DNA of 63,385 bases. Source: Octopus bimaculoides (taxonomy: Eukaryota). This document shows, one piece after another, positions 5,377 through 60,647 of this stretch. The notes under the pieces are model-generated. The model ran no database searches. It was not told the DNA's origin and worked only from the letters and a program-made list of their open reading frames with translations. The number at the start of each line of letters is the position of its first letter. Position 1 is the stretch's first letter. The stretch covers positions 48,200,445 through 48,263,829 of the forward strand of contig NC_068999.1 in assembly GCF_001194135.2 (NCBI RefSeq), read 5' to 3'. The position numbers and the translations under genes were made by a program.

Positions 5377-5449
5377 ATGGAAAGAGCCTACTTGCAATTA
5401 TTCCTGGTGTTTTGCATAATGGTGTCTGTCAGCGGATTCTTTTTCATCG
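5377..5449 (+). CDS. Gene A exon 1: signal peptide [24 protein letters not shown]
   Basis: Acceptor ttttag|AG-ATG (so a non-coding exon should lie upstream), hydrophobic core, donor G|gtatgt, phase 1 matches the next exon. Confidence 0.75.
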
Positions 5450-58900: not shown

Positions 58901-60647
58901 TAATAGCTGTTTTATATTATCTTCCTTCTGCATACATGAGTATGAAAGTTATGAATTAGCTTATGATTTAATATATGATTGTTAAGAATTAATTAAAAGG
59001 AGTACTTTAACTGTTTGATGACTTTCAGAATACTACTCGCAGTCATAGGATCGCGGTTTCGATTCCCAGACGTTGTGAGTGTTTATTGAGCGAAAACACC
59101 TAAAGCTCCACGAGGCTCCGGCAGGGGATAGTGGCGAACCCTGCTGTGCTCTTTCACCACAACTTTCTCTCACTCTTACTTCCTGTTTCTGTTGTGCCTG
59201 TAATTCAAAGGGCCAGCCTTGTCACACTGTGTCACGCTGAATATCCCCGAGAACTACGTTAAGGGTACACGTGTCTGTGGAGTGCTCAGCCACTTGCACG
59301 TTAATTTCACAAGCAGGCTGTTCCGTTGATTGGATCAACTGGAACCCTCGATGGACAATGGACATTATATGATGATGATGATGATGATNNNNNNNNNNNN
59401 NNNNNNNNNNNNNNNNNNNNNNNNNNNNNNNNNNNNNNNNNNNNNNNNNNNNNNNNNNNNNNNNNNNNNNNNNNNNNNNNNNNNNNNNNNNNNNNNNNNN
59501 NNNNNNNNNNNNNNNNNNNNNNNNNNNNNNNNNNNNNNNNNNNNNNNNNNNNNNNNNNNNNNNNNNNNNNNNNNNNNNNNNNNNNNNNNNNNNNNNNNNN
59601 NNNNNNNNNNNNNNNNNNNNNNNNNNNNNNNNNNNNNNNNNNNNNNNNNNNNNNNNNNNNNNNNNNNNTGAAACTCTTTATATAAAGAGTCAACTATTAA
59701 ATTGTTTGAATCCAGGCATTGTTCAGTGTTATTAGTTGATGAACTTCCATCAATGTATTGGACACAGTATCCTGTTAGAATATCATTCCTGAATTCCACA
59801 GGTAAACTCTGTGAAAAAGACAAACATTAACAATAATGTTACAATATCCTTTGATTCATTCAATACTTTCACCTCCAACCCCATCTCTAACCATTTCACA
59901 TTCTCATCAACTTATCTCCCCATCCACCTTTCCCAATTTTTTGTCTGTATTCCCTTTTAATACTCGCCATTTTGATTCTTTTAAAAAAACTGGCACTCCA
60001 TCAGTCATGACCAACAATTGTTCCAGCTGATTTAATCAATGAAACAACCTGCTTGTGAAATCAACATGCAAGTGGTTGAGCACTCCACTGATATGTATAC
60101 CCTTAGTGTAGTTCTCAAGGAGTTTAAGTGTGACACATAATGTGACAAGGCTGGCCCCTTGAAATACATGGGCAACTCATTTTTTACCAACTGAGCGAAC
60201 CAGAGCAACATGAGACAAAATATCTTGCTCAAGGACACAATTCATCACCAGGAGTCAAATTCATGACCTAATGACCATGAGCTCAATACCTTGACCACTA
60301 AACCAGGCACCTTCATTTCTTTCCTTTTTTTTTTTTGTATCTTGAGAGTATTACAACACACCATTATTTACAGTAGCGATACTTTCAGACTATCAAGTAC
60401 TGCATTAGTTTGCAATGCAACATTCAATGCTTACTATGATCAGATAATTTGAATAGGGATAAATGGTACAGTCTTTGGTACTCTTGTGCTGTTTCTACAA
60501 CTCAATAGGATTTAACATTCAGTATATACTTTGAAAAAATAGTTCAATTTACCTGCCAGTATACTGTGATACATCTTTGGTTTGTTGGGTGGGGACAACT
60601 CCATTCATAATATCGAAAATAAGATGTTTTGACTGGATAAGGAATGG
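48656..60647 (-). CDS. Gene B (visible spliced span): paralogous gp130/Domeless-like receptor; N-terminal exons lie beyond the window end or in gaps
   Basis: 9 exons with GT-AG sites and the same phases as gene A exons 7-14 and 16; 19/48 identities in the 141-nt exon pair. Confidence 0.85.
49190..49640 (-). repeat. Coding tandem repeat of about 102 nt (34 aa) with a DYVDEP core, 4 good units plus 1 diverged (GYIDAS)
   Basis: Tyr-core anchors at + positions 49201, 49291, 49393, 49495 and 49600 (spacings 90, 102, 102, 105 nt, all frame-preserving). Confidence 0.92.
50250..50580 (-). mobile_element. LINE (CR1/L2-group) ORF2 linker relic
   Basis: SLDLSCATKCSWSFW..KRNS.KFSES.F.LL.KPEDSIKSTPMEKASDF; motif recall only. 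Confidence 0.4.
51403..51448 (-). CDS. Gene B juxtamembrane exon (HCKYVTAIEVTTIDR)
   Basis: tttatttcag| acceptor, |gtaaat donor, 46 nt phase 2-0 as in gene A exon 14. Confidence 0.8.
53112..53196 (-). CDS. Gene B transmembrane exon (DLSEIYLYSFMLLATVLLITSGLFIYIR)
   Basis: tttacttttacag| acceptor, |gtaagt donor, hydrophobic helix, phase 1-2. Confidence 0.88.
53896..54190. mobile_element. hAT (Charlie-like) MITE, 295 bp, 31 bp from a gene B donor site
   Basis: TIR caagggttctcaacc / ggatgaaaacccttg; TSD ttctaaat / ttctagat (nTCTAGAn-like). Confidence 0.8.
54222..54386 (-). CDS. Gene B FN3-5 second half (GKRKEFPVNETKAVENVVIINGLSPDTEYSVCIQVKTKHGLSLMSDTITGVTKDT)
   Basis: FN3 LxPDTEYxV signature; YxVCIxVxT..SLMSD shared with gene A exon 12. 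Confidence 0.9.
55379..55519 (-). CDS. Gene B FN3-5 first half (SIKPQKPYVYWSETKFSLTWPTLQCSDWNGIPIAYVLHYAEGKNCEN)
   Basis: ctctttcag| acceptor, |gtgagt donor, 141 nt, aligns without gaps to gene A exon 11. Confidence 0.9.
55930..56850 (-). mobile_element. CR1/Jockey-group LINE reverse transcriptase relic
   Basis: DVIYL..FDKVNHG, S.V.QGTVLG, ASYADDTKV (YADD at 56047-56058). Confidence 0.85.
56940..57190 (+). mobile_element. Penelope-like GIY-YIG endonuclease C-terminal relic
   Basis: YIESTTRKFHICIKEHMHRDTSI*KHLRKC...NRINLRIMEALLI. Confidence 0.75.
57315..57465 (-). CDS. Gene B FN3-4 second half ([50 protein letters not shown])
   Basis: cttttag| acceptor, |gtaatt donor; LTKAECIF shared with gene A exon 10. 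Confidence 0.9.
58119..58338. mobile_element. Intact piggyBac-like MITE, 220 bp
   Basis: TTAA-CCCTTTAGCATT ... AATGCTAAAGGG-TTAA. Confidence 0.88.
58729..58877 (-). CDS. Gene B FN3-4 first half (PRKPTAVYVSKISDKMYNVSWLIEQPQESVNVTVFWCLNQITSSKIECR)
   Basis: ttttattcag| acceptor, |gtaagt donor; VYV..YNVSWL..NVT shared with gene A exon 9. Confidence 0.9.
59035..59350 (+). mobile_element. SINE S2, 5'-truncated
   Basis: Reverse complement of 51547-51904 and 12284-12675. Confidence 0.85.
59669..59808 (-). CDS. Gene B FN3-3 second half, partial (SLPVEFRNDILTGYCVQYIDG...SLYKEF, runs into the N gap)
   Basis: tttttcacag| acceptor; GYCVQ and SLYKEF shared with gene A exon 8; 3' part hidden in gap 59389-59668. 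Confidence 0.88.
60553..60647 (-). CDS. Gene B FN3-3 first half (IPYPVKTSYFRYYEWSCPHPTNQRCITVYWQ)
   Basis: tttctcacccag| acceptor, |gtaaat donor, 95 nt; YYxWxC...CITVYW shared with gene A exon 7. Confidence 0.9.

What the first reader, a model, noticed from the sequence alone, without database searches (positions are those of the whole stretch)
5377..60647. Convergent pair of full-length gp130/Domeless-like receptors: candidate cephalopod two-chain cytokine receptor
Seen: two paralogues tail-to-tail, with stop codons 13 kb apart, identical intron phases and exon sizes of 95/95, 141/141, 46/46, 152/149 and 148/151 nt. Identity is only about 40% (19/48 in the FN3-5 first-half exon), so the duplication is old and both frames stayed open. 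Known: human IL31RA and IL6ST are convergent neighbours, and Drosophila dome lies next to its short-tailed paralogue et/latran. Inference: unlike et/latran, both genes here keep long but very different Tyr-rich tails, as expected for a heterodimeric or division-of-labour receptor pair in a lineage whose cytokine ligands are poorly known.
Basis: partly seen in the sequence, partly recalled or inferred. Interest (0 to 1): 0.82.

Follow-up and report, generated by a model that had tools for sequence, protein, structure and literature searches.

The report
Octopus Domeless/gp130-like receptor gene pair
Two neighbouring octopus genes pointing at each other encode relatives of the insect Domeless and human gp130 cytokine receptors; they belong to a larger octopus-specific cluster, only one lies whole in this window, and nothing here tests whether they work as a pair.

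Summary
The window is Octopus bimaculoides chromosome CM046619.1. Gene A (+, 5377-35665, LOC106877106) is complete: 16 AG/GT exons and 967 codons. Gene B (-, LOC106877108) is only partly present. The window holds its last nine exons (60647 down to 48656: three FN3 domains, TM, tail). One exon runs into the N gap at 59389-59668. B's more 5' exons, as far as they could be located, lie beyond the window's end.

The reported exon sizes, intron phases, about 42% identity and 13-kb stop-to-stop spacing are all correct.

Assignment to the Domeless/gp130 family is supported. A profile search puts arthropod "Cytokine receptor" (Domeless-type) and mollusc LIFR-like proteins as the best non-cephalopod relatives. 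The AlphaFold model of A (pLDDT 91.7) matches complete gp130, IL-12Rbeta2, OSMR and LIFR ectodomains at TM about 0.5, against about 0.2 for RPTP or contactin. A also keeps the Domeless-type juxtamembrane LP (JAK-binding) motif.

The canonical CHD cysteines, WSXWS and YxxQ are degenerate or absent.

The "pair" is part of a cluster with at least a third close paralogue (C) and a more distant fourth lineage. The A/B convergent layout is conserved in Argonauta. The two-chain receptor idea remains untested.

The parts
5377..5449 (+). Gene A exon 1: start codon and signal peptide ([20 protein letters not shown]...), ends in phase 1
   Evidence: the N-terminus is conserved in the O. vulgaris orthologue P0002
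8864..9094 (+). Gene A exon 2: Ig-like domain D1 (231 nt, phase 1 to 1), 64 nt downstream of the N gap 8385-8799
   Evidence: aligns with gp130 D1 in the Foldseek full-ectodomain matches
10768..10873 (+).
13688..13860 (+).
15438..15601 (+). Gene A exon 5: first half of D3
16799..16943 (+). Gene A exon 6: second half of D3, with GLWNPP at the position of the WSXWS / 'WS' motif
17978..18072 (+). Gene A exon 7 (95 nt): first half of D4; paralogous to B 60647-60553
21539..21767 (+). Gene A exon 8 (229 nt): second half of D4; paralogous to B 59808-59669 plus the part lost in the gap
23014..23165 (+). Gene A exon 9 (152 nt): first half of D5
23783..23930 (+). Gene A exon 10 (148 nt): second half of D5
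25878..26018 (+). Gene A exon 11 (141 nt): first half of D6
26354..26512 (+). Gene A exon 12 (159 nt): second half of D6; this domain gives the best Pfam fn3 match
28771..28867 (+). Gene A exon 13 (97 nt): transmembrane helix
31223..31268 (+). Gene A exon 14 (46 nt): juxtamembrane [16 protein letters not shown], a Domeless-type LP (JAK/Hop-binding) motif
   Evidence: the LP motif's function in Dome comes from PMC4751595
33381..33419 (+). Gene A exon 15 (39 nt, [13 protein letters not shown]): present in XP_014781386.1, with no counterpart in B
34760..35665 (+). Gene A exon 16: cytoplasmic tail (301 codons plus stop), with [DG]Y[VI] tyrosine motifs
60553..60647 (-). Gene B: first exon inside the window (95 nt, first half of D4). 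It is an internal phase-1 exon, not the gene start
59669..59808 (-). Gene B: second half of D4. 140 nt are read and the rest (about 89 nt) is lost in the N gap
59389..59668 (.). Assembly gap that removes the 3' end of B's D4 exon and part of the following intron
58729..58877 (-). Gene B exon (149 nt): first half of D5. NCBI's truncated 654-aa model starts in this exon
57315..57465 (-). Gene B exon (151 nt): second half of D5
55379..55519 (-). Gene B exon (141 nt): first half of D6
54222..54386 (-). Gene B exon (165 nt): second half of D6
53112..53196 (-). Gene B exon (85 nt): transmembrane helix
51403..51448 (-). Gene B exon (46 nt): juxtamembrane SHCKYVTAIEVTTIDR. With the next exon it reads ...IDR|VPS, a degenerate LP motif
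48656..49930 (-). Gene B last exon: cytoplasmic tail (424 codons plus stop)
49267..49559 (-). 102-bp tandem repeat (2.9 copies, 92% matches) inside B's tail, encoding the 34-aa DYVDEP module
35666..48655 (.). 12,990-nt intergenic spacer between the two stop codons. It is repeat-rich, no gene was recognised, and it contains the 10-N gap at 46251-46260

Best explanation
A and B are paralogous single-pass receptors of the Domeless/gp130 ('tall' class I cytokine receptor) family. They belong to an octopod-specific cluster of such genes.

Gene A is complete. Its parts in order are: signal peptide, Ig-like D1, a two-domain cytokine-receptor homology module (D2-D3), three membrane-proximal FN3 domains (D4-D6), a TM helix, a juxtamembrane LP motif and a 300-residue tyrosine-bearing tail.

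Gene B has the same D4-D6/TM/46-nt-exon/tail layout in the window. Its orthologue shows a degenerate D2, a D3 and no Ig domain.

Shown here: the gene structures, the paralogy, the family relationship and the fold.

Inferred from what is established for Dome and gp130: an as yet unknown helical cytokine brings two receptor chains together; a JAK (Hop orthologue) bound at the LP motif phosphorylates tail tyrosines; these recruit SH2 proteins such as STAT.

Unresolved: whether A and B act as separate homodimeric receptors, which is the simplest expectation from Dome, or as chains of one heteromer.
For: Gene models. A's spliced translation contains XP_014781386.1 entirely. B's exons match LOC106877108 at 100%.

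Family, by profile search. A profile of A/B/C ectodomains was searched against 1.84e9 representative proteins. 79 of the listed hits match 300 or more profile positions in one collinear stretch at a similar distance from the N-terminus. The best named non-cephalopod hits are arthropod 'Cytokine receptor' proteins (Strigamia, Bemisia, Nicrophorus, Oedothorax) and a Haliotis 'LIFR-like' protein. Among the relatives, one is above the Pfam cut-off for IL6Ra-bind and one for CRLF2_D1, and others are just below for Lep_receptor_Ig and LIFR_D4.

Family, by alignment. Invariant or near-invariant columns are shared with A: the W of the 'WS' motif, the D3-D4 linker, and the Cys patterns in D2, D5 and D6.

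Structure. The AF2 model of A's ectodomain has pLDDT 91.7. Its top 11 Foldseek PDB hits are full ectodomains of gp130, IL-12Rbeta2, OSMR and LIFR, with E down to 6e-26 and TM 0.47-0.56 over about 600 columns. RPTPsigma, contactin and a thick-filament chain score TM 0.17-0.23. The model of B's orthologue gives the same picture.

JAK site. Arthropod relatives share a ...KLPPGL motif after the TM helix, and A has INIDLPEA at the same place. In Dome this LP motif binds Hop (PMC4751595).

Conservation. Argonauta keeps the convergent A-like/B-like arrangement.
Against: Only fn3 passes a Pfam cut-off in the octopus proteins themselves.

Sequence-only PDB searches score LIFR no better than RPTP-F, DCC or Dscam.

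The first CHD cysteine pair is absent from A, B and C, and B has also lost half of the second pair. 'WS' has become WN or WT.

No PxxPxP box 1 and no YxxQ is present.

B's LP motif is degenerate and C's is absent. The O. vulgaris model of A lacks the LP exon.

The N-terminal half of B's D2 is modelled with pLDDT below 50.

No expression, ligand, JAK or STAT data were available. AF2 may partly reproduce gp130 geometry learnt in training.
Confidence: 0.8

Rival explanations
1. One reading: A and B are two chains of one heteromeric cytokine receptor that divide the work. A, with its Ig domain and clear LP motif, would bring the JAK. B, without an Ig domain and with repeated DYVDEP tyrosine modules, would supply docking sites.
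For: The ectodomains differ in composition: A has Ig D1 and B's orthologue has none. The LP motif is clear in A and degenerate in B. The tails are unrelated. The convergent arrangement is kept in Argonauta. Dome forms heteromers with its neighbouring paralogue Lat (PMC2914635, PMC4751595). From my own recollection, not checked here, vertebrate pairs such as IL-12Rbeta2/IL-12Rbeta1 combine a chain with an Ig domain and one without.
Against: No interaction, co-expression or complex prediction could be done here. There are at least three close paralogues (A, B, C) plus a fourth lineage, so no exclusive pair is implied. Gene proximity is the normal result of local duplication. Dome itself signals as a homodimer (PMC4751595).
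Confidence: 0.2
2. B (and perhaps C) is a modulatory or decoy chain that dampens signalling by A-type receptors, as Eye transformer/Latran does for Dome.
For: B has a degenerate LP motif, no Ig domain and a degenerate D2 with a lost cysteine. The Dome/Lat precedent involves a neighbouring, fast-evolving paralogue (PMC2914635).
Against: B keeps a long tail (441 aa, 20 Tyr). Its conserved, even amplified, DYVDEP modules are also preserved in O. vulgaris, unlike Lat's short tail. Lat lacks the FN3 legs, whereas B keeps all three.
Confidence: 0.12
3. These are generic FN3 adhesion or RPTP-like surface proteins, as the automatic names suggest ('receptor-type tyrosine-protein phosphatase F-like', 'PTPRQ'), and are unrelated to cytokine signalling.
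For: Automatic names of the O. vulgaris and Sepia relatives. In sequence-only PDB searches RPTP-F, DCC and neogenin score about as well as LIFR.
Against: No phosphatase or kinase domain is present. The collinear whole-ectodomain matches are to the Dome/gp130 family. The structural TM-score to RPTPsigma and contactin is only about 0.2, against about 0.5 for gp130-type receptors. The Dome-type LP motif is present.
Confidence: 0.05

Closest known systems
Drosophila Domeless and arthropod 'Cytokine receptor' orthologues
   Same: These are the best-scoring named non-cephalopod relatives, with one collinear match from D2/D3 to D6. Shared features are the single 'W(S)' in place of WSXWS, the D3-D4 linker, the Cys patterns in D5 and D6, and a juxtamembrane LP motif at the same distance from the TM helix.
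   Different: Arthropod proteins keep all four CHD cysteines and 'WS'. They have about 200 more extracellular residues before the TM helix, and a YxxQ is reported for Dome. Octopus A/B/C lack the first Cys pair, have WN or WT, end after D6 and have no YxxQ.
Vertebrate gp130 (IL6ST) and the other tall receptors: LIFR, OSMR, IL-12Rbeta2, LepR
   Same: A has the same six-domain ectodomain: Ig, a two-domain CHD and three FN3 legs. The A model superposes on whole gp130 and IL-12Rbeta2 ectodomains at TM 0.5-0.56, and the B orthologue's model does likewise over the part it has. The profile also weakly matches the gp130 CHD (E 3e-3).
   Different: Sequence identity is only 14-16% in the structural alignments. 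No WSXWS, no Pro-rich box 1 and no YxxQ is present, and no Pfam IL6Ra-bind or Lep_receptor_Ig hit is found in the octopus proteins.
Dome / Eye transformer (Latran) neighbouring paralogue pair in Drosophila
   Same: A locally duplicated receptor pair in which one copy evolves faster and has a changed ectodomain. Dome and Lat form heteromers (PMC2914635, PMC4751595).
   Different: dome and lat are tandem in the same orientation, and Lat has no FN3 legs and a short tail. Octopus A and B are convergent, and both keep three FN3 legs and long tails. The octopus set also has at least three close members, not two.
Mollusc gp130/LIFR-like ('IL6R-like') receptors
   Same: Gastropod and bivalve proteins (Haliotis 'LIFR-like', Gigantopelta, Pomacea, Solemya, Ylistrum) are collinear relatives. 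In a rough NJ tree the cephalopod genes group together at 83% bootstrap; their placement among the other mollusc sequences is weakly supported. A 2026 survey traces IL6R-like receptors back to Mollusca (PMC13203501).
   Different: That survey does not mention cephalopods. The octopod genes are more derived in D2 and D3 and have multiplied locally.

Membership tests
Class I cytokine receptor (CHD-bearing) | Two-FN3 cytokine-receptor homology module with the characteristic elbow | tested here: met
   The AF2 model of A (pLDDT 91.7) superposes on complete gp130, IL-12Rbeta2, OSMR and LIFR ectodomains, CHD included. The profile matches the gp130 CHD across D2-D3 at E 3e-3. In B's orthologue the N-terminal half of D2 is poorly modelled.
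Class I cytokine receptor (CHD-bearing) | Four conserved cysteines (two disulfides) in the N-terminal CHD domain | tested here: not met
   Alignment with Dome orthologues. The first pair (C..C.W) is absent from A, B and C. The second pair is kept in A and C, and half of it is lost in B. It is near-invariant in the wider family.
Class I cytokine receptor (CHD-bearing) | WSXWS motif in the C-terminal CHD domain | tested here: not met
   At that position A has LWNPP, B FWTKP and C IWNKN. The invertebrate relatives have only 'WS', and only the W is kept in octopus A/B/C.
Class I cytokine receptor (CHD-bearing) | Membrane-proximal JAK-binding motif (box 1, or the LP motif of Dome and IFNGR1) | tested here: inconclusive
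   No PxxPxP is present. A has INIDLPEA where arthropod relatives have KLPPGL and where Dome's Hop-binding P925 lies. B has IDR|VPS, C has no proline there, and the O. vulgaris model of A lacks the exon. This is sequence pattern only; binding was not tested.
Class I cytokine receptor (CHD-bearing) | STAT-docking tyrosine motif (YxxQ in gp130 and Dome) | tested here: not met
   No YxxQ occurs in the tails of A or B. The only YxxQ in C is juxtamembrane YKKQ. Recurrent [DG]Y[VI] motifs could be docking sites, but their partners are unknown.
gp130-type 'tall' receptors | Architecture: Ig-like D1, CHD, three membrane-proximal FN3 domains, TM helix | tested here: met
   Met for A on exon and domain map and on whole-ectodomain Foldseek matches at TM about 0.5. 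B's orthologue has no Ig domain but otherwise matches.
gp130-type 'tall' receptors | Pfam signature domains (IL6Ra-bind, Lep_receptor_Ig) | tested here: not met
   Only fn3 passes its cut-off in A, B, C and their orthologues. CRLF2-like_D2 is sub-threshold at E 0.004-0.008. The more canonical relatives do carry such domains.
Domeless family (invertebrate 'Cytokine receptor') | Collinear homology over the ectodomain with named Dome orthologues ranking above other FN3 proteins | tested here: met
   The NJ tree places the cephalopod genes together among mollusc and arthropod family members (rough method, moderate support).
Heteromeric two-chain cytokine receptor | Physical association of the two chains and joint requirement for signalling | not testable with these tools
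   No complex prediction, expression data or interaction data were available.

The most novel reading that the evidence does not exclude
Octopods evolved, independently of vertebrates, a multi-chain class I cytokine receptor system from a single Domeless-like ancestor. An Ig-bearing, JAK-binding chain (A) would pair with Ig-less or LP-less chains (B, C), whose amplified and gene-converted DYVDEP tyrosine modules would act as the docking platform.
Probability: 0.15. Interest if true: 0.7.

Novelty: new member of a known kind. Interest (0 to 1): 0.42.

Why it matters
In the fly, JAK/STAT signalling is described as having one signalling receptor, Dome, plus the short paralogue Lat (PMC2914635). 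These octopus genes are currently labelled 'uncharacterized' or mis-named as phosphatases.

Recognising them as a locally expanded Domeless/gp130-type cluster of at least three close paralogues, with very different tails, gives cephalopod immunology and neurobiology a concrete set of candidate cytokine receptors. It also gives a starting point for finding their unknown ligands.

It further shows how far the textbook motifs (CHD cysteines, WSXWS, box 1, YxxQ) can decay while the gp130-like fold and the LP motif persist.

The claim that the two genes form one receptor would be more interesting, but it rests on analogy only.

Tried and rejected
- A homologue search with A's tail ORF alone found nothing, although the full protein is in the database.
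- Regular-expression scans for box 1 (PxxPxP) between the TM and tail exons found nothing relevant.
- Looking for the 46-nt exons by A/B similarity failed. Splice-site and phase enumeration gave candidates, later confirmed by the annotated proteins.
- Pfam and phmmer against the PDB with my first, incomplete A model gave only generic fn3 and ambiguous LIFR/RPTP-F hits.
- Exact-protein genomic look-ups failed for P0002, P0004, P0005 and P0006, whose isoforms are not on record. The look-up for P0007 returned a 108-kb gene range without DNA. The position of paralogue C relative to the window is therefore unknown.
- A D1-D3-only profile recovered too few homologues for a separate model.
- The first AlphaFold job on the 953-aa target was lost, and the first bootstrap script timed out.
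- A Pfam scan of the 61-sequence alignment exceeded the size limit.
- Pfam on retroelement-like ORFs in the introns mostly gave nothing.
- Rfam and tRNA scans of the window were empty.
- Literature searches found no paper linking Domeless-type receptors to cephalopods.
- Rejected: B as a pseudogene. All exons seen are open, and orthologues are conserved in O. vulgaris and Argonauta.
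Full report
ORIGIN AND GENE MODELS

The window has 37% G+C, many microsatellites and five N runs. It is identical, N runs included, to Octopus bimaculoides GCA_001194135.2 chromosome CM046619.1 around 48.24-48.27 Mb.

I first found exon pairs by comparing stop-free segments of the two strands. I then set splice sites by hand.

The annotated protein XP_014781386.1 (LOC106877106, 'uncharacterized', P0001) was recovered by a homologue search.

The final model of gene A has 16 exons between 5377 and 35665, all with AG/GT. 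Its 967-codon translation contains P0001 entirely. It also has 14 N-terminal residues that are conserved in the O. vulgaris orthologue.

Gene B corresponds to LOC106877108 (P0003, 654 aa). Every exon of that model maps to the minus strand of the window at 100% identity.

CHECKING THE OBSERVATION

The reported facts hold:
- The stop codons are 12,990 nt apart.
- Exon sizes are 95/95, 152/149, 148/151, 141/141 and 46/46, and I add 159/165, 97/85 and 229/>=140.
- Intron phases are identical in the two genes.
- Identity is 42% over the shared short exons and 19/49 in the 152/149 exon.

The gaps were tested first, as the scan's program asked:
- 8385-8799 and 15138-15147 are intronic in A. The protein is continuous across them in both Octopus species.
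- 46251-46260 is intergenic.
- 59389-59668 removes the last 89 nt or so of B's D4 second exon. What follows the gap is a dispersed repeat, not the rest of the exon.

B's open frame therefore cannot be proven here. NCBI's B model is truncated for the same reason.

'Full-length' is wrong for B. Position 60647 is the acceptor of an internal phase-1 exon. The O. vulgaris orthologue (P0004, 1084 aa) has about 210 more N-terminal residues. Exons for residues 50-211 of that orthologue lie at L001 1469-4273, which is 1.2-4 kb beyond the window's end. The first 49 codons were not located.

WHAT THE PROTEINS ARE

Sequence evidence taken alone is weak:
- Pfam sees only fn3.
- A PDB sequence search scores LIFR (E 2e-8 with a family profile) about as high as RPTP-F, DCC and neogenin. 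The gp130 CHD comes in at 3e-3.
- The automatic names of relatives are 'RPTP F-like' and 'PTPRQ'.

Stronger tests decide the question.

(i) Profile search. A profile of the A, B and C ectodomains was searched against 1.84 billion representative proteins and found 290 proteins at E <= 1e-3. Among the listed hits, 79 match 300 or more profile positions in one collinear stretch, at a similar offset from the N-terminus. The best named non-cephalopod ones are arthropod 'Cytokine receptor' proteins from Strigamia, Bemisia, Nicrophorus and Oedothorax. To my knowledge that is the name databases give Domeless. A Haliotis 'LIFR-like' protein and other mollusc proteins follow. Among these relatives, one carries IL6Ra-bind and one CRLF2_D1 above the Pfam cut-off, and others carry Lep_receptor_Ig or LIFR_D4 just below it.

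(ii) Family alignment. Columns shared with A include the W of the 'WS' motif, the D3-D4 linker, the YW..P....NG motif of D4, and the Cys patterns of D2, D5 and D6.

(iii) Structure of A. The AlphaFold2 model of A's ectodomain is confident (pLDDT 91.7, pTM 0.67). Its eleven best Foldseek matches in the PDB are complete ectodomains of gp130, IL-12Rbeta2, OSMR and LIFR. E-values go down to 6e-26 and TM-scores are 0.47-0.56 over about 600 columns. RPTPsigma, contactin-2 and a thick-filament chain reach only TM 0.17-0.23.

(iv) Structure of B. The model of B's O. vulgaris orthologue gives the same ranking. The N-terminal half of its D2 is poorly predicted, and it has no Ig domain.

CANONICAL MOTIFS

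The textbook motifs are largely degenerate:
- The first CHD disulfide is missing in A, B and C, and B has also lost half of the second.
- WSXWS is reduced to LWNPP (A), FWTKP (B) and IWNKN (C). The invertebrate relatives themselves have only 'WS'.
- There is no Pro-rich box 1 and no YxxQ.

One functional motif does survive. Arthropod relatives share ...(V/I)K(L/V)P(P/K)GL about 15-20 residues after the TM helix. This corresponds to the LP motif of Dome, whose P925 is needed for Hop binding and signalling (PMC4751595). A's 46-nt exon encodes [16 protein letters not shown], with an LP at that place. B reads ...TTIDR|VPS across the exon junction. C has no proline there.

The tails of A and B are not significantly similar (best E 0.28). 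They share only short motifs, DEVQDK and NCxxGYV, and a recurring [DG]Y[VI] pattern.

FAMILY CONTEXT

The 'pair' is part of a larger set.
- A third paralogue, C (LOC106877032, same chromosome), is 51% identical to B overall.
- A further, more distant cephalopod lineage exists (Argonauta P0012).
- In O. vulgaris another 1011-aa fn3 gene lies 5 kb from C.

A rough neighbour-joining tree with 200 bootstraps groups:
- the octopod A/B/C sequences (100%);
- A with an Argonauta A-like gene (75%);
- B and C with an Argonauta B-like gene (74%);
- a cuttlefish sequence outside the octopod group (80%).

The A/(B,C) duplication therefore seems to post-date the octopod-decapod split and to pre-date the Octopus-Argonauta split.

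In Argonauta hians the B-like and A-like genes are again convergent, with stops 2.8 kb apart.

I did not check the IL31RA/IL6ST statement.

MECHANISM AND VERDICT

The best-supported reading is this. A is a gp130/Dome-type signalling receptor chain. B is a divergent paralogue with the same three-FN3 legs, TM helix and exon plan, but a different N-terminus and tail.

Ligand-driven dimerisation, JAK binding at the LP motif, and tyrosine phosphorylation of the tails are inferred from the family. They are not shown here.

The differences between A and B would suit a heteromer or a modulatory chain. They equally suit independent receptors for different ligands. Nothing available here discriminates between these.

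No paper in the held library links Domeless-type receptors to cephalopods.

I rate this a real, correctly perceived gene pair of a known family, with an over-stated 'full-length two-chain' reading and moderate interest.

Noticed in passing
window 59669-59808 and about 48656-49170 (gene B), compared with paralogue C (P0005, P0006): B and C show concerted evolution. Within a species they are 93-100% identical in the second D4 exon and in the distal tail, which is higher than the orthologue identity of 80-93%. Their TM, juxtamembrane and proximal tail regions are only 10-30% identical. Species-specific residues are shared by B and C. This looks like gene-conversion tracts.
   Followed up: partly
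window 49267-49559 (-): A 102-bp tandem repeat (2.9 copies, 92% matches) in B's tail encodes a 34-aa module carrying a DYVDEP tyrosine motif. O. bimaculoides B has 4 DYVDEP sites and O. vulgaris B has 7, so the module's copy number varies between species.
   Followed up: partly
L001 1-5445 (beyond window end 63385); L001 gaps at 3761-4133, 4830-5445 and 6568-7014: The annotation splits gene B. A separate 167-residue gene model overlaps the stretch that holds B's D2/D3 exons, and LOC106877108 starts only in D5. Several N gaps in B's introns and exons cause this.
   Followed up: partly
window 4255-4560 (-): A fragment of a DDE_3 (Tc1/mariner-type) transposase ORF lies upstream of gene A (Pfam E 6e-11).
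   Followed up: partly
window 1852-2157 (+); 31894-32980 (+): Retroelement remnants are present. One ORF matches DUF7083 (E 5e-13). In A's intron 14 a run of ORFs contains a CCHC-like zinc knuckle and a protease-like stretch, with no Pfam hit. RT-like ORFs at 21949-22308 (+) and 56112-56309 (-) also gave no Pfam hit.
   Followed up: partly
window 942-1253, 6939-7139, 9526-9726, 11335-11496, 21090-21239, 39858-40169, 45029-45256; also 3297-3644, 12281-12647, 51544-51785, 59036-59351: Two families of short dispersed repeats (SINE-like) occur in both orientations in introns and spacers. One copy directly follows the gap that truncates B's exon.
   Followed up: no
P0002 (O. vulgaris orthologue of A), juxtamembrane region: The O. 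vulgaris model of A replaces the LP-motif exon ([16 protein letters not shown]) with unrelated sequence (GVSKMNVGSYGTCNSTYNH). This is either an alternative exon or an annotation error.
   Followed up: no
P0010 / P0156 (Sepia pharaonis 'PTPRQ') and arthropod relatives: The cuttlefish and arthropod relatives have about 190-200 extra extracellular residues, probably two more FN3 domains, between D6 and the TM helix. Octopod A, B and C end after D6, which makes them gp130-like in domain count.
   Followed up: no
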